NCBI RefSeq assembly: GCF_023055435.1
Contig: NW_025963791.1
Span: 41,540,001-41,604,000, forward strand
Reading direction: 5' to 3'
Origin: Haliotis rufescens
Taxonomy: Eukaryota
Length of the DNA stretch: 64,000 nucleotides
Below, piece by piece: positions 13,936 through 64,000 of the stretch. Positions within the stretch are counted from its first letter, which is position 1, and each line of letters starts with the position of its first letter. A program made the position numbers and the translations under genes. Under the pieces are notes generated by a model. That model was not told the origin of the DNA. It saw only the letters and a list, made by a program, of their open reading frames with translations, and did not search any database.

Positions 13936-14601
13936 ATGATGGCTAATAGAGGAAAGTCGTTTCACGTCGCTGGCAATCAGGAGAAGGAAGAGAACCTGTG
14001 CCTTGTAGTCCTTGGAGCCTCTGGAGTAGGCAAGACAACCATTATCTCTCAATTCCTGGACCACAATTCTATTACAGAGTATAAAGGAACGTTCGAGGAG
14101 ATCCACAGGTGCAAATACGACTCATCAGGATTGGACTTGACAGTAGAAATCGTGGAAATAATCAATGGGGATGCAGTTCCAACTGTAAGGAAGCAGGCTA
14201 TTGCAAAAGGGGATGCCTTTGTTCTCGTTTATTCCGTGGATGATGCCGACTCTTTTGAGCAAATTTACACCTTGCGAGATCTCATTCTGGAAGAAAAGAA
14301 GGAAATAAATGTTCCAATTTATGTGGTTGCCAATAAAATAGACATTGCAGAAGAAAGGAAGACACCCATCTGGCAGGTCGCTGATGCTATTGTGACAATA
14401 GATTGGGAGCACAAGTACTCTGAAGTGTCAGCTGAACACCCATCGCAGATTGCTGAACTATTTGGAAATGTTATTGCTTATGCTGTCTCAGTTTATAAGG
14501 AAAGGTTTGTAATGCAACCGAGACGAATGACAACGCCTGCGTATCTCTTCTCACTGATGAGGAAGAAGCTCTCTGCCAGGAGACAAAAATCAGCTTTTTG
14601 A
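13936..14601 (+). CDS. Ras-dva/RASD-like small GTPase, copy 1 (221 aa, intronless)
   Basis: G1 GASGVGKT, G2 EYKGTFEE, GDAFVLVYSVDDADSFE, G4 NKID, G5 EVSAE, IDW motif; start taken at MMANRG downstream of TATA. Confidence 0.88.
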   Translation: MMANRGKSFHVAGNQEKEENLCLVVLGASGVGKTTIISQFLDHNSITEYKGTFEEIHRCKYDSSGLDLTVEIVEIINGDAVPTVRKQAIAKGDAFVLVYSVDDADSFEQIYTLRDLILEEKKEINVPIYVVANKIDIAEERKTPIWQVADAIVTIDWEHKYSEVSAEHPSQIAELFGNVIAYAVSVYKERFVMQPRRMTTPAYLFSLMRKKLSARRQKSAF

Positions 14602-15961
14602 ACATGTTTAAATGAACATTTGAATGAGTGTGGTTCATGGGGCTTCCAATGTACATTCTCATGTTAAGATGTCTTTCAAGCATTTGTTATTTTAACTCTT
14701 GTACTTATGTATCTCTGTGTAAATATAATCCAGAGGAGTAAATGATGTGATTCTTAACACTGTTTTCATTTTGATTTTTATGTTTCTTATCATTATTGTG
14801 AATTACTTCAGGATGTGTCTCAATTTTATTATACATTGACCCCGTTTATATCAGGAAGGCAACATTCTAGCTGTTATTAACCGTTTGAAACATTTATCCA
14901 ATGTGTGAAGCCAATTTCTTGTGTCCCGCGAAATATTGCTAAAAGCGGCATAAAACCATTCTCAATCACTCACTTACTCAAAACAATTTGTCAGAGATGA
15001 CGATCTAGACAACATAGAAAAGTGAGCACATCAAATGTTTTTGCCTCAATATCACGGCAGGTAGTGAACAGAATATTGCATCCCTTAAGATATACATAGT
15101 GATGTCACTGATATACTTTTATTACTATATATGTGCTGCTGATATCTACGAAAGATAGAATAATTGTGAACACACGTCATGATCACTGATCTTTCTGACA
15201 TACAACACAATTGTTCCAATTGACATTCTTGAAATATACTTATAAGACAAAAGTAAAGAAACTCTATATCTATTGCAGACAGACAGATACTTTATTCAAG
15301 TCACACCGCAATAAAATACAACATTATTCATATACAAAATACAACAGGCAGGGCCACTCTATATGGAGTGAAATATTGATGGAATTCTACTGCTACCTCG
15401 ACCTTTGCTGTTTGATATGCTCCTGTGTACAATAGCGATACAATCGAGCGGTGGACGGGGCAGGATCCGCACATGGAACTTATGGTATCATTGCTACTTG
15501 ATAGTGATTCATAAACACTAGAAGTAGGAATCGTACAATGGACCCTGCTTTTAGCAGAGGTTCTTAGGATTATGGAAAGAAAAAGATGCGTTTCTGAAGA
15601 ACAAAAACAGTGTGATCACAGGTCACGCACAGCAAATACGGACACATTTTAAATCTTATTTGAATAAGTGAAAAGTACTGCCTTTGGAAGAAATTGAAGT
15701 TTTCTTTCGTCTGCCGGTCATTATCAAGAAGTGTACGAGAAAACAGTTTATGATAACCGAGAAGGTGATAGAAAGGTTCATGACAGCCAAAGATAGTTCG
15801 ATCCAGTATAATCGAGTATGTTACGAACAAATAACAGCCATTTGTAATTTCTACCAATATCTCTCGCGTCTCTAAAATTCATGGAATAAAAAAATATGAA
15901 AACTGTGTACATTCGTCAAATACAATTTTGAACAAAATTCAAACACATATGTTTTAATATA

Positions 15962-17369
15962 TACTCACACGCAAAAGAAACGCAAGTCGAGTTTGCAGTA
16001 AACATGTTATTTATTTAACAGTGAAGACAAGAAATACTAATGGGGCAAGATTGACAATAATTTGACTGAAGACAGTTTAATGGATTAAAAGGCAGATGAC
16101 ATAATTGTTTTTTTCAAATGTTAAAGGCTTACACAGTTTCGGGTCAATACCCAAAATGTCAGTCAGTACCTGGTGTGACCACCATTAGCACTGATCACTG
16201 CCACACATCTCCTGTACATTGAGTGAATCAGACGATTTGTTAAGGCCCTAGGGATCCTCCTGCACACACCCAGAGCAGCTGTGCGTAGTTCATCGGCAGT
16301 TGTAGGGACTGGGCGCACATTGTGCAGACGCCTTTGAACCTCATCCCACAAGTGTTCGATGGGGTTCAGATCAGAGCTGAGGGCTGGCCACGGTAGAACA
16401 CGGATGTTGTGTTGTTGCAGAAAGACCATGGTAGCTCTGGCAACATGGGGACGAGCGTTGTCCTGCTGGAAAATGCGTTGTTGATGTTGTGCAAAAAATG
16501 GAACAACGTGGGGTCTGATCACTTGGTCGATATACTGCTGAGCAGTGACGCCGTGTCCCCGACCTTGACCAAAATTCAGAAAGCACATGGGTCCAAGTCT
16601 CGCATTAAGTCCAATCCCTGCCCATATCATGACGCTAGGTCCACTCCATGGAGCTCTTTCCACAACGTTTCTGTCAGCGAAACGATCACCTCCACGCCGC
16701 CAAATTCTGACTCTTCCGTCTGCATGGGAGACACAAAAGCGACTTTCATCAGCGAAGATGACACCACTCCACTGACGATGAAGTCGTGCTTGTCGATGCC
16801 GGGACGACAGGACGACGTGCTGGTCGGCGACATCTTAGGTTGTTGGAACGGAGACGTCGGATCACAGTGTCCCGGCTAATGTGTCGATTATGTGTTCCTA
16901 TGGTCTGTCGATCACTTTCACTTGCAGTTAGGAACTGATGTCGCTGGTGTTGACGGGTAATCTGCCGATATTGTCGAGGTGTGGTTAGCCTAGGACGACC
17001 GCTCCGAGGAAGGTCATCTGTGGTCTGTGTAGCATTGTATCGATGCAGGAGACGGTAAATTGTGGTTATGTTAACGTTGAAATGACGGACAACATCTTGG
17101 ACAGAATCTCCAGCTTCCAAACGTCCGATAGCCTGGTTTCTCTGAATTTGAGTTAGGCGTGGCATTGTTGACAAAGGAGTGGTAGGTCCAAGAATCGGCC
17201 ACAGTTTTATACCCACTACAGTTCGTGACAGTTCGTGCATTTTCGATTTGGCGAGAAATGGGTGCATGATACCCACATATTCCAAAATGCAACCAAACAT
17301 ATCAATTTATTGTTTCGTGTTTGTTACCTATTTGCTTAAAACCACTTGCGTTTCTTTTTCGTGTGAGTA
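15962..17369 (-). mobile_element. Tc1/mariner DNA transposon (DD34E), defective
   Basis: ~26-bp TIRs TACTCACACG(C/A)AAAAGAAACGCAAGT, TA target; transposase 17165-16163 with paired-like HTH, GRPR, FADES, QQDNA-34aa-E; frameshift plus 30-bp deletion. Confidence 0.95.
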
Positions 17370-63600: not shown

Positions 63601-63829
63601 AATATAACTGAGACACATTCTGAAGTAAATTGCATTAATAATATGAAACATACAAATCAAAATGGAAACAGTTTTAGGAATCACATCATTTACTCCTCTG
63701 GAATATATTTACACAGAGATACATAATTACAAGAGTTAAAATAACAAATGCTTGAAAGATATCGTTACATGAGAATGTACATTGGATGCCCAATGAACCA
63801 CACTCGTTCAAATGTTCATTAAAACATGT

Positions 63830-64000
63830 TCAAAAAGCTGATTTTTGTTTCCTGGCAGAGAGCTTCTTCCTCATCAGTGAGAAGAGATACGCAGGCGTTG
63901 TCATTCGTCTCGGTGGCATTACAAACCTTTCCTTATAAACTGAGACAGCATGGGCAATTACACTTCTAAATAGTTCAGCCATCTGCGACGGGTGTTCAGC
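63830..64000 (-). CDS. Ras-dva/RASD-like small GTPase, copy 6 (3' part only; runs off window)
   Basis: Reverse strand encodes ..AEHPSQMAELFRSVIAHAVS...MPPRRMTTP...RKQKSAF*, same as copy 5; absent from ORF track. Confidence 0.85.
   Translation of the reverse strand, partial: AEHPSQMAELFRSVIAHAVSVYKERFVMPPRRMTTPAYLFSLMRKKLSARKQKSAF

What the first reader, a model, noticed from the sequence alone, without database searches (positions are those of the whole stretch)
13936..64000. Recently amplified array of at least six intronless Ras-dva/RASD-like GTPase genes in two convergent tandem clusters
Seen: three + copies and three - copies differing by only a few residues, all with open frames over the visible sequence (one loses only 5 C-terminal aa; the sole coding indel is in-frame). 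Flanking DNA has accumulated many indels, and the co-duplicated Tc1 is dead. The two arrays use different repeat units (5.0 vs 6.1 kb), so the gene was amplified twice independently. Knowledge: the sequence pattern (TFEEIH, GDAFVLVYSVDD.DSFE, VxxDW, RRxxxP tail) resembles the Ras-dva family, studied in fish/amphibian development and regeneration; Ras-type genes are usually low copy. Inference: dosage-driven or birth-and-death expansion of an inducible signalling, immune or wound-response gene.
Basis: partly seen in the sequence, partly recalled or inferred. Interest (0 to 1): 0.85.

Follow-up and report, generated by a model that had tools for sequence, protein, structure and literature searches.

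The report
Abalone array of atypical Ras-like genes
Six nearly identical single-exon Ras-type GTPase genes sit in two facing tandem clusters in the red abalone genome. They are real, constrained and already annotated, and they belong to an abalone-only offshoot of the Ras-dva/RASD-like group that has lost the usual switch motif and lipid anchor.

Summary
There are six copies, three on + and three on -, 95-99% identical in protein, and no others in the 1.33-Gb genome. The sixth copy starts 492 bp past the window end. All N gaps lie in an (AGT)n satellite between the clusters, and none touches a gene.

The genome is Haliotis rufescens. All six proteins already exist as NCBI/UniRef records.

The family call is half right. 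The nearest relatives in 1.84 billion proteins are the DTSG-FPAMR / RRx[ST]xP / CAAX group, which includes fish "rasd family member 4". An AU test rejects a clade with that vertebrate group (p=0.012).

The Haliotis-only subfamily has EIIN in place of DTSG, no catalytic Gln and no CAAX. It keeps the P-loop, Thr35, NKxD and RRMTTP.

The two clusters have different units (4994 bp; 6.1 and 3.8 kb) and share only about 1.3-1.5 kb, including a TATA promoter.

"Recently amplified" is only partly right. Flanks of the older lineages differ by K=0.06-0.13, while coding dS is 0.007-0.07, which points to gene conversion. H. cracherodii copies share derived states with particular copies.

The G-domain core has 9 synonymous and 1 nonsynonymous change. 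RNA-like contigs cover the genes. The scan also noted another such array elsewhere in this genome.

The parts
12874..13597 (+). Segment B0: a copy of the 0.73-kb segment that follows c1 and c2, here lying directly in front of the first gene segment
   Evidence: Self-blastn: 12874-13597 matches 14890-15619 and 19885-20614 at 96.3%
13597..14901 (+). Gene segment A1 with copy c1 (CDS 13936-14601, 221 aa, P-loop GASGVGKT)
   Evidence: The protein is identical to database protein P0179
15957..17374 (-). Dead Tc1-like element in unit 1 (1418 bp, 31-nt TIRs). The transposase is split by a frameshift and stops, and its middle part is missing
   Evidence: (DDE_3)
18591..19895 (+). Gene segment A2 with copy c2 (CDS 18930-19595). 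TATA box about 65 bp and a kB-like GGAGATTTCC about 80 bp upstream of the ATG
   Evidence: The protein is identical to P0180. RNA-like contigs cover 18914-19808
20951..22398 (-). Second copy of the dead Tc1-like element (unit 2)
   Evidence: TIR matches; split ORFs 21157-21582 and 21743-22324
23612..25084 (+). Gene segment A3 with copy c3 (CDS 23925-24575, TAA at codon 217, 216 aa). Its 3' flank stays collinear with the - copies about 190 bp further than c1 and c2 do
   Evidence: The protein is identical to P0176
30560..40489 (.). Imperfect (AGT)n / 36-47-bp satellite between the two arrays. It holds all 11 assembly gaps (31186-39928)
49986..56146 (-). First 6.1-kb unit of the - array with copy c4 (CDS 53959-54624, P-loop GASRVGKT)
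   Evidence: The protein is identical to P0001
56146..62259 (-). Second 6.1-kb unit of the - array with copy c5 (CDS 59993-60655, 3-nt in-frame deletion at codon 16)
   Evidence: The protein is identical to P0174
62259..64000 (-). Third, shortened unit of the - array. It lacks the 2.4-kb piece that corresponds to 50595-53027. Copy c6 has its CDS at 63830-64492, so its first 492 bp lie beyond the window. The unit ends near window-equivalent 65274
   Evidence: The protein is identical to P0177

Best explanation
This is a genuine locus in the red abalone (Haliotis rufescens). It holds six functional, single-coding-exon genes for an atypical Ras-family G protein.

How the array formed (inferred from anatomy): a segment of about 1.5 kb, carrying the TATA promoter, the CDS and 0.3-0.5 kb of 3' flank, was duplicated in inverted orientation. 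Each copy was then amplified in tandem on its own, most likely by unequal crossing-over. This gave a 4994-bp unit carrying a dead Tc1 on one side, and a 6.1-kb unit with one shortened 3.8-kb spacing on the other. Gene conversion and purifying selection keep the coding regions far more alike than their flanks.

The protein: it belongs to a Haliotis-restricted branch of the RASD/Ras-dva-like (DTSG-FPAMR) group. It keeps the P-loop, switch-I Thr, NKxD and a Ras fold, so it most likely still binds guanine nucleotide (inferred). DxxG has become EIIN, there is no catalytic Gln, Ras position 12 is Ser, and the CAAX box is gone. It therefore probably cannot switch or hydrolyse in the canonical way and is not lipid-anchored (inferred).

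How it is likely controlled (inferred): by amount, through six copies each with a compact TATA promoter, and by phosphorylation of the conserved C-terminal RRMTTP site, which fits a basophilic-kinase and 14-3-3 mode-1 consensus.
For: Copies and uniqueness.

Species: RefSeq H. rufescens proteins XP_046366731.1 and XP_046366741.2 map at 100% identity 21-29 kb beyond the window, on a contig of the same length, 45,695,856 bp.

All six proteins are exact matches to NCBI/UniRef records.

Fold and family: Pfam Ras 81.3 bits against a cutoff of 21.6. AF2 mean pLDDT 79.5, and Foldseek TM 0.87 to H/K-Ras and Rap.

Motifs: a gapless alignment to Rap2A gives S29=G12, G/R30=G13, T52=T35, E74=D57, N77=G60, G78=residue 61, and NKID.

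Relatives: nearly all of the top 150 carry DTSGxxxFPAMR, and many of them also end in a Cxxx (CAAX-type) box; RRx[ST]xP shows in the relatives read in full and in the consensus of the 40-sequence alignment. The canonical abalone paralogue L008 has all three.

Trees: the superclade against Ras and Rap rows has support 100/99, and the family with its Haliotis sisters 96/91.

Selection: in the core codons 31-171 there are 9 synonymous and 1 nonsynonymous variable sites (binomial p=2e-5). The EIINGDAVPTVRK block is identical in the H. asinina, H. rubra, H. rufescens and two full-length H. cracherodii proteins; the partial H. cracherodii protein P0005 has one substitution in it.

Conversion: for c1-c3, synonymous differences are 1/146 against 26/295 in the 3' flank (Fisher p=2.5e-4); c3-c4 gives p=1e-3 and c1-c4 p=0.015.

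Units and breakpoints. The promoter is shared by both arrays.

Transcription: contigs of two small, RNA-like runs cover the CDS and 3'UTR but not the unique intergenic bins. They include a c5/c6-type contig with the 3-nt deletion and a c1/c2-type 3'UTR contig.
Against: No biochemistry exists. Nucleotide binding, lack of hydrolysis, cytosolic location and phosphorylation are all inferred from motifs.

The RNA status of runs X15 and X16 is the tool's guess, and contigs give neither expression levels nor transcript ends.

Gene conversion is inferred from a contrast between coding and flank divergence, not from mapped tracts. Constraint on synonymous sites could contribute. For c4-c5 and c1-c5 the contrast is not significant.

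Read-depth confirmation of copy number was not possible, because only contigs were served.

The order of events in the + array is not resolved: a 2.97-kb deletion in the first unit and insertion before a second duplication fit equally well.
Confidence: 0.75

Rival explanations
1. The copies are assembly artefacts: collapsed or expanded haplotypes, or false tandem duplications. The true locus would hold one or two genes.
For: Copy number could not be checked by read depth, because only Logan contigs were served. The region between the arrays contains 11 gaps.
Against: The arrays themselves are gap-free. The copies differ in flank structure and unit length (4994 bp, 6.1 kb, 3.8 kb). The older lineages differ by K=0.06-0.13 in their flanks, far above allelic levels. 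DNA contigs of other individuals from other studies carry several variant forms of the gene, and an RNA-like contig carries the c5/c6-specific deletion. H. cracherodii has at least three annotated members, and H. rubra and H. asinina two each.
Confidence: 0.04
2. The genes are decaying duplicates or pseudo-GTPase relics without function. The loss of DxxG, loss of CAAX and the stop in c3 would be steps of degeneration.
For: G3 is not canonical, and there is no catalytic Gln and no CAAX. c3 has a premature stop. Expression evidence is thin.
Against: All frames are open. The G-domain core shows 9 synonymous against 1 nonsynonymous change. The altered switch-II block is identical across the full-length proteins of four Haliotis species. 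The stop at codon 217 is shared with both full-length H. cracherodii proteins and removes only 5 residues. RNA-like contigs cover the genes.
Confidence: 0.08
3. The genes are abalone orthologues of vertebrate Ras-dva (rasd4) with a developmental or regeneration signalling role.
For: Fish rasd4 is among the best relatives (2e-28). The IDW[ED]H, DAF.LVY.VDD..SFE and RRx[ST]xP motifs are shared. The protein atlas lists 'Rasd family member 4' at rank 4.
Against: An AU test rejects a clade of this family with the rasd4 group (p=0.012). The trees put rasd4 with the canonical CAAX-bearing invertebrate proteins, including abalone L008. The family lacks DTSG, FPAMR and CAAX. Ras-dva is described as membrane-bound and as a vertebrate clade whose nearest invertebrate homologues are about 41% similar (PMC4001240, PMC6115384).
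Confidence: 0.05
4. The copies are retrogenes: reverse-transcribed mRNA copies inserted repeatedly, which would explain the lack of introns.
For: The CDS is intronless, and the segment shared between the arrays is about mRNA-sized, 1.3-1.5 kb.
Against: The shared segment includes the TATA box and about 200 bp of upstream promoter. There is no poly(A) tract at its 3' end. The copies sit in regular tandem units with co-duplicated flanks and a Tc1. The canonical paralogue L008 and most other paralogues are also single-ORF, so intron lack is a family trait.
Confidence: 0.02

Closest known systems
Invertebrate RASD/Ras-dva-like small GTPases. Examples are abalone L008 on contig C201, Pycnogonum CAM1324738.1 and Limulus XP_022251072.1. 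Pipelines label them Rap-2b-like, Di-Ras2-like, Rhes-like or Dexras1
   Same: Best hits in 1.84 billion representatives, at 31-43% identity. They share the Ras fold, the P-loop, DAF.LVY.VDD..SFE, IDWEH and the C-terminal RRx[ST]xP. The abalone member has a single-ORF CDS. They form one superclade against the Ras and Rap rows, with support 100/99.
   Different: They have DTSG (canonical DxxG), FPAMR and a C-terminal CAAX box (NSCxxx). The window family has EIIN, VPTVR and no Cys near the C-terminus.
Vertebrate Ras-dva, which NCBI and UniProt name 'rasd family member 4' in fish. That these two names mean the same gene is my recollection and was not verified here
   Same: The motif set is as above, and a fish member hits at 2e-28. 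Ras-dva papers say the nearest homologues are invertebrate GTPases (PMC6115384).
   Different: It is a separate clade with support 100/99, and the AU test rejects union with the window family (p=0.012). It is membrane-bound (PMC4001240). It is single or low copy and has a developmental and regeneration role.
Rap2A/B/C, the label given by NCBI's annotation
   Same: Rap2A is the best solved structure by sequence (1kao, 3e-20, 76 bits, gapless alignment).
   Different: Identity is only about 28-30%. The top 150 unlabelled relatives listed all score higher (81-342 bits). A Rap-like row falls outside the superclade. The family has no DTAG, no Rap effector loop and no CAAX.
Atypical or pseudo-GTPases of the Ras superfamily with non-canonical G3 or no hydrolysis. 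Examples from my own knowledge are RGK proteins with DxWE, and Rnd and RhoH. The pseudoGTPase concept is described in PMC12490416
   Same: G1, G4 and G5 are kept while the switch-II/G3 chemistry and the catalytic residue are altered. Regulation by expression level and by phosphorylation or 14-3-3 is the known pattern for such proteins.
   Different: There is no sequence kinship beyond the superfamily. The exact replacement (ExxN followed by Gly) is not one I know from those families, and its nucleotide state is untested.
Other tandem arrays of single-exon, CAAX-less Ras-like genes in the same genome: C8 0.58-0.76 Mb, C90 25.36-25.51 and 26.13-26.21 Mb, and C13 6.49-6.56 Mb
   Same: They have the same gene architecture: a single ORF, a TATA box 65-140 bp upstream of the ATG in the arrays sampled (no canonical TATA was found for singleton loci L009 and L030), an RRxTxP tail in the C13 (L010-L012) and C8 (L020-L029) arrays but not in every paralogue (L014, for example, lacks it), and no CAAX. 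They are tandemly amplified and form a weakly supported common clade (83/79).
   Different: They keep DTPG or DTEG, which is a canonical DxxG. Only the window family and its DITK sister (C113/L007, H. asinina P0004) have lost it.

Membership tests
Ras family small GTPase (Pfam PF00071) | Profile score above the curated cutoff | tested here: met
   81.3 bits against 21.6, E=7.7e-23, covering residues 23-181
Ras family small GTPase (Pfam PF00071) | G1 P-loop GxxxxGK[ST] | tested here: met
   GASGVGKT in c1 and c2, GASRVGKT in c3-c6. It aligns to Rap2A residues 10-17
Ras family small GTPase (Pfam PF00071) | G2 switch-I threonine (Thr35) | tested here: met
   T52 in YKGTFEE aligns to T35 of Rap2A
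Ras family small GTPase (Pfam PF00071) | G3 DxxG (Asp57, Gly60) and a catalytic residue at position 61 | tested here: not met
   EIIN-G replaces DTAG-T/Q in a gapless alignment. The block is identical in all six copies and in the full-length H. cracherodii, H. rubra and H. asinina proteins
Ras family small GTPase (Pfam PF00071) | G4 NKxD and G5 SAx | tested here: met
   NKID at residues 133-136. SAE at 165-167, where the relatives have SAK
Ras family small GTPase (Pfam PF00071) | Ras-type G-domain fold | tested here: met
   AF2 gives pLDDT above 90 over most of residues 20-186. Foldseek TM 0.87 (target-normalised) to HRas, KRas and Rap
RASD/Ras-dva-like group (DTSG-FPAMR type) | Closest relatives and clade membership against Ras and Rap | tested here: met
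   The top-150 relatives are almost all of this type. The superclade has support 100/99 against one fungal Ras row, one Rap-like row and one other row. Caveats: the ingroup was chosen by similarity, and bona fide RASD1/2 and DIRAS references were not available.
RASD/Ras-dva-like group (DTSG-FPAMR type) | Switch-II signature DTSGxxxFPAMR | tested here: not met
   The family has EIINGDAVPTVR. Only Pro and Arg are kept
RASD/Ras-dva-like group (DTSG-FPAMR type) | C-terminal RRx[ST]xP motif and IDW[ED]H before beta-6 | tested here: met
   RRMTTP and IDWEH are present in all six copies. RRxxxP and W157 appear in the consensus of a 40-sequence alignment
RASD/Ras-dva-like group (DTSG-FPAMR type) | C-terminal CAAX box (lipid anchor) | tested here: not met
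   The copies end ...SARRQKSAF...SARKQKSAF or ...SARK, with no Cys in the last 150 residues. Relatives end NSCxxx
Vertebrate Ras-dva (rasd4) proper | Falls inside or sister to the vertebrate Ras-dva clade | tested here: not met
   The rasd4 clade (100/99) lies in the other half of the superclade. The AU test of family plus rasd4 as one clade gives p=0.012 and a log-likelihood loss of 46.5
Vertebrate Ras-dva (rasd4) proper | Membrane-bound GTPase (PMC4001240) | not testable with these tools
   Only the absence of a CAAX box can be read from the sequence. Localisation needs an experiment.
Rap2 (NCBI label 'Rap-2b-like') | Orthology to Rap2: the Rap effector loop, DTAGTE and CAAX | tested here: not met
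   About 28-30% identity to Rap2A. The top 150 other proteins listed score higher. A Rap-like row lies outside the superclade
Tandem gene array evolving in concert | Head-to-tail units with shared junctions, and coding regions more alike than their flanks | tested here: met
   Units. Synonymous against 3'-flank divergence for c1-c3 is 1/146 against 26/295, p=2.5e-4. Conversion tracts were not mapped.

The most novel reading that the evidence does not exclude
Abalones have built a large repertoire of non-lipidated, single-exon, TATA-driven Ras-dva-like G proteins: at least 56 further intact ORFs, including four large tandem arrays. Within it, this subfamily would have turned into a 'locked' G protein. 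It would bind nucleotide but no longer switch (ExxN in place of DxxG, no catalytic Gln). It would act by dosage and by phosphorylation of its RRxTxP tail, as a stimulus-induced stress or immune module, comparable in logic to the IRG and GIMAP expansions of other animals.
Probability: 0.2. Interest if true: 0.65.

Novelty: new variant of a known kind. Interest (0 to 1): 0.4.

Why it matters
Small GTPases of the Ras family are usually low-copy, lipid-anchored switches. Here a whole genus keeps a multi-copy branch that has lost both the anchor and the DxxG switch motif, yet is under clear purifying selection.

That makes it a natural test case for what a Ras fold can do without canonical switching. 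It is also an example of how tandem arrays are kept uniform by gene conversion.

For abalone biology and aquaculture, the family is a candidate stimulus-responsive gene set, but only expression data can show that.

The genes themselves are already in RefSeq under a misleading 'Rap-2-like' name. What is new is the classification, the motif losses and the history of the array, not the existence of the genes.

Tried and rejected
I therefore could not fetch the orthologous loci of H. cracherodii, H. rubra or H. asinina. Cross-species comparison rests on proteins only.
- The read tools served only Logan contigs and 2026 miRNA-seq raw reads. Read-depth copy number, transcript ends and expression level could not be measured. 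The many 'joints' come from high-copy repeats at 18.0-18.8 and 23.0-23.6 kb, and I did not read them as copy-number variation.
- The bacterial promoter and terminator scan does not apply to an animal genome, and I ignored it.
- The AU test on the 115-row tree did not finish in three runs. I repeated it on a 43-row subset.
- Literature searches for rasd4, for Haliotis with Rap-2, and for Ras-superfamily expansion in molluscs found nothing on this family.
- No bona fide RASD1/2, DIRAS or Ras-dva1/2 reference sequences could be obtained by id, so placement relative to those named human and frog proteins is untested.
- Retroposition was rejected because the promoter is co-duplicated and there is no poly(A) tract.
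- Haplotype artefact was rejected on unit structure and flank divergence.
- The P-loop Gly/Arg difference at Ras position 13 was considered as a lesion and rejected. Arg or Lys at that position occurs in canonical relatives, for example GAARVGKT in Pycnogonum and GGIKVGKT in Limulus. Gly is the state in H. rubra and H. asinina.

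
Full report
**What is there.** A tblastn search with the 221-aa product of the second copy finds five complete copies in the window and the last 56 codons of a sixth at the window's end.

| Copy | CDS (window coordinates) | Strand | Note |
|---|---|---|---|
| c1 | 13936-14601 | + | |
| c2 | 18930-19595 | + | |
| c3 | 23925-24590 | + | TAA at codon 217 |
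| c4 | 53959-54624 | - | |
| c5 | 59993-60655 | - | 3-nt in-frame deletion at codon 16 |
| c6 | 63830-64492 | - | same deletion; starts 492 bp past the window end |

- The six-frame search of the whole assembly (1.33 Gb, 615 contigs) shows that the sixth copy is complete.
- No other near-identical copy exists. The next paralogues are 51%, 42% and 35% identical.
- All frames are open. The stop in c3 removes five residues.
- The three + copies lie left of the three - copies, so the two clusters converge.

**Gaps.** The window has 11 runs of N between 31186 and 39928.
- All lie inside a ~10-kb imperfect (AGT)n satellite at 30560-40489 that separates the clusters.
- None is near a gene, and both arrays are gap-free.
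- The spacing of the clusters, and strictly their relative orientation, depends on the assembly across those gaps. I did not try to fill them.

**Whose genome, and is it known.**
- Two RefSeq proteins of Haliotis rufescens (XP_046366731.1 and XP_046366741.2) sit on a contig of exactly the window contig's length, 45,695,856 bp.
- They map at 100% identity 21-29 kb beyond the window. The window is therefore red abalone.
- Each of the six proteins is an exact match to a protein already held by NCBI, UniRef and nr on that contig. The genes are annotated.
- Their relatives in other abalones are named 'ras-related protein Rap-2a/b/c-like'.

**Anatomy of the arrays.** The + array has a 4994-bp period: 13597-19895 aligns to 18591-24885 at 97.5% with 70 gaps.
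- The unit consists of a 1.3-kb gene segment A, a 0.73-kb segment B and a 2.97-kb segment C.
- Segment C holds a Tc1-like element with 31-nt inverted ends (15957-17374; second copy 20951-22398). Its transposase is frameshifted and lacks its middle part.
- A further B copy (12874-13597) abuts the first gene directly, so the order is B-A-B-C-A-B-C-A.
- This fits either three B-C-A units with a 2.97-kb deletion in the first, or a B-A duplication followed by gain of C and a second duplication. I cannot tell which.

The - array has a different structure.
- It has two 6.1-kb units (49986-56146 and 56146-62259).
- It has a third unit that lacks a 2.4-kb internal piece, giving a 3.84-kb gene spacing. 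That unit ends near window-equivalent 65274.

Between the two arrays, only the gene segment is alike.
- The shared part runs from roughly 200 bp upstream of the ATG to 300 bp (c1, c2) or 500 bp (c3) past the stop.
- It includes a TATA box about 65 bp before the ATG. It has no poly(A) tract at its end.
- The copies are therefore DNA-level duplicates, not retrocopies.

**Age and mode of evolution.** Coding identity is 97.2-99.6%.

| Comparison | Coding dS | 5' and 3' flank K |
|---|---|---|
| c1-c2, c5-c6 | 0.014 | 0.010-0.035 |
| c1-c3, c2-c3 | 0.007 | 0.028-0.094 (3' flank 0.09, 5' flank 0.03-0.04) |
| c4-c5, c4-c6 | 0.035 | 0.026-0.074 |
| + array against - array | 0.03-0.07 | 0.09-0.13 |

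- For c1-c3 there is 1 synonymous difference in about 146 sites, against 26 in 295 flank sites (Fisher p=2.5e-4).
- c3-c4 gives p=1e-3 and c1-c4 gives p=0.015. c4-c5 and c1-c5 are not significant.
- The simplest reading is gene conversion confined to the coding region, so coding similarity understates the age of the older splits.
- Protein comparison agrees. Both full-length H. cracherodii proteins end at the same position as c3. One shares c3's Val46, and a third shares Met172 with c5 and c6.
- At least three lineages therefore probably predate the split of these two species. Only the c1/c2 and c5/c6 duplications look truly recent.
- H. asinina and H. rubra each have two copies that pair by species. 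This could reflect independent duplication or concerted evolution.

**Selection.**
- Pairwise Nei-Gojobori dN/dS is 0.14-0.36, except for pairs with c3, where counts are tiny.
- Across the six copies, codons 31-171 (the G-domain core) carry 9 synonymous and 1 nonsynonymous variable sites (binomial p=2e-5).
- The two termini carry 12 nonsynonymous and 2 synonymous sites (Fisher p=5e-4 for the contrast).
- The unusual switch-II block is identical in the six copies and in the full-length proteins of H. cracherodii, H. rubra and H. asinina; the partial H. cracherodii protein P0005 differs at one residue.
- These are maintained genes.

**Transcription.**
- Two small runs that the tool guesses to be RNA have contigs over 18914-19808, which is the CDS and 3'UTR. 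They also cover transposon sequence.
- They have nothing in the unique intergenic bins, which DNA runs do cover.
- One contig carries the codon-16 deletion and c5/c6-type variants. Another matches the c1/c2 3'UTR exactly.
- This is suggestive, not proof.
- DNA contigs of other individuals carry several variant forms of the gene.

**What the protein is.**
- Pfam Ras scores 81.3 bits against a cutoff of 21.6.
- An AlphaFold2 model (mean pLDDT 79.5, above 90 over most of the G domain) matches H/K-Ras and Rap at TM 0.87.
- A gapless alignment to Rap2A gives the table below.

| Ras position / motif | Window protein |
|---|---|
| P-loop | GAS[G/R]VGKT; Ser at position 12; Gly (c1, c2) or Arg (c3-c6) at position 13 |
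| Thr35 | kept (T52) |
| Asp57 | Glu (E74) |
| Gly60 | Asn (N77) |
| Position 61 | Gly (G78) |
| NKxD | kept (NKID) |
| SAK | SAE |
| CAAX | absent |

- Arg or Lys at position 13 occurs in canonical relatives. Gly is the state in H. rubra and H. asinina. That difference is normal family variation, not a lesion.

**Family placement.** An exhaustive HMMER scan of 1.84 billion representatives finds members at 50% identity or more only in Haliotis. It then finds hundreds of relatives at 30-43%.
- Almost all of the best 150 carry DTSGxxxFPAMR, and many of them end in a Cxxx (CAAX-type) box such as NSCxxx; the RRx[ST]xP motif shows in the relatives whose full sequences were read.
- One of them is a fish protein whose family is named 'rasd family member 4'. 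I recall this as the database name of Ras-dva but could not verify it.
- The abalone genome has a canonical gene of this type on another contig (L008). It has DTSG, FPAMR, RRRRSMP and CSLN, and it is also a single ORF.
- Among solved structures, canonical members are closest to Di-Ras2 and Rap.

Trees give the following (115 rows quick; 43 rows careful):
- The whole group separates from a fungal Ras row and a Rap-like row with support 100/99.
- The window family is monophyletic (100/99).
- Its sister is a DITK-bearing pair: C113/L007 and H. asinina P0004.
- Next come two neighbouring genes on the same contig, L009/P0012 and P0026/P0316 (96/91).
- Vertebrate rasd4 forms its own clade (100/99) among the CAAX-bearing proteins.
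- Forcing the window family and rasd4 into one clade is rejected (AU p=0.012).

Ras-dva's authors define it as a vertebrate clade of membrane-bound GTPases whose nearest homologues are invertebrate proteins (PMC6115384, PMC4001240). The motif losses can be ordered along the tree: CAAX was lost first, a loss shared with many abalone paralogues. DTxG then became DITK and finally EIIN.

**Genomic context.**
- The assembly holds at least 56 further full-length Ras-like matches in one open frame without stops.
- Many are in tandem arrays: 11 on C8 (0.58-0.76 Mb), 8 and 9 on C90, and 4 on C13 (6.5 Mb).
- Of those I extracted, only the canonical L008 ends in a CAAX box; the C13 and C8 arrays keep an RRxTxP tail, and the arrays sampled have a TATA box 65-140 bp upstream. 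Several have a perfect or half CRE (TGACGTCA or CGTCA) just upstream of the TATA.
- The window copies have two (+ array) or one (- array) CGTCA half-sites. They also have a conserved GGAGATTTCC, one mismatch from a kB consensus, next to the TATA box. These are leads only.
- Another first-stage note reports a five-copy array of similar genes elsewhere in this genome.

**How it most likely works.**
- Shown: six maintained genes with their own promoters, a Ras fold, intact G1, G2, G4 and G5 motifs, altered G3, no CAAX, and a conserved RRMTTP.
- Inferred: the protein still binds guanine nucleotide but cannot use Gly60 and residue 61 chemistry. It would be slow or unable to hydrolyse and to switch, and it would not be lipid-anchored.
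- Inferred: its activity would then be set by abundance (copy number and a compact TATA promoter) and by phosphorylation of RRMTTP. That site fits a basophilic-kinase site and the 14-3-3 mode-1 consensus.
- From general knowledge, precedents for such regulation are the RGK, Rnd and RhoH proteins. The pseudoGTPase concept is described in PMC12490416.
- None of this has been tested.

**Verdict.**
- This is a real, already annotated but misnamed gene array.
- Its interest lies in a genus-wide, selected loss of the DxxG motif and the lipid anchor in a Ras-family protein. It also lies in the concerted evolution of the array and in the large expansion of the parent family in abalone.
- This is moderately interesting, and it is a new variant of a known kind.

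Noticed in passing
window 3421-4835: Tandem repeat with 39-bp (13-codon) periodicity, about 35 copies at roughly 96% identity. It gives long artefactual ORFs (SLRWQGDKLFHIT repeated) in two frames.
   Followed up: no
window 18000-18800, 23000-23600 and 19800-20000: Very high-copy short repeats with summed contig word depth of 1e5-1e6 in DNA runs. One set lies directly upstream of c2 and c3. Another lies at the point where the 3' flank of c1 and c2 stops matching c3 and the - copies. They may have served as duplication breakpoints.
   Followed up: partly
window 54869-55201 vs 55360-55671; 60903-61247 vs 61457-61785: The promoter-proximal 330 bp upstream of c4 and c5 is repeated directly about 490-550 bp further upstream at about 85% identity. 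This is the 'ghost copy' of another first-stage note. It is direct, not inverted, and has no gene body.
   Followed up: partly
window 46724-49121 (+): Fragmented non-LTR retrotransposon (RVT_1 hit, ORFs broken into four pieces) between the satellite and the - array.
   Followed up: no
beyond the window: window-equivalent 85305-88409 (-), 92827-93465 (-), 93668-93960 (+), 83344-83493 (+); loci L033, L009: More family members lie just downstream. XP_046366741.2 is encoded in two exons split by about 2.4 kb. XP_046366731.1 is a single ORF with DTEG and ends KQNSM. There is a 73-79% identical fragment of the window family, and a 96% copy of the first 50 codons of XP_046366731.1. The six-copy array is therefore part of a paralogue cluster of about 80 kb.
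   Followed up: partly
loci L010, L014 (also L007, L009, L019, L030): Promoters of other abalone Ras-like arrays carry a perfect CRE (TGACGTCA) or half-CRE 25-60 bp upstream of a TATA box, although the promoters are otherwise unalignable. This is a possible shared stimulus-responsive architecture.
   Followed up: partly
window 13856, 18850, 23850 (+); 54695, 60728 (-): GGAGATTTCC, one mismatch from the kB consensus GGGRNYYYCC, is conserved about 15 bp upstream of the TATA box in all five in-window copies and occurs nowhere else in the window.
   Followed up: partly
G000 contigs C8 0.58-0.76 Mb, C90 25.36-25.51 and 26.13-26.21 Mb, C13 6.49-6.56 Mb: Large tandem arrays (11, 8, 9 and 4 matches) of single-ORF Ras-like genes at 31-36% identity to the window protein. 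Together with singletons there are at least 56 intact ORFs.
   Followed up: partly
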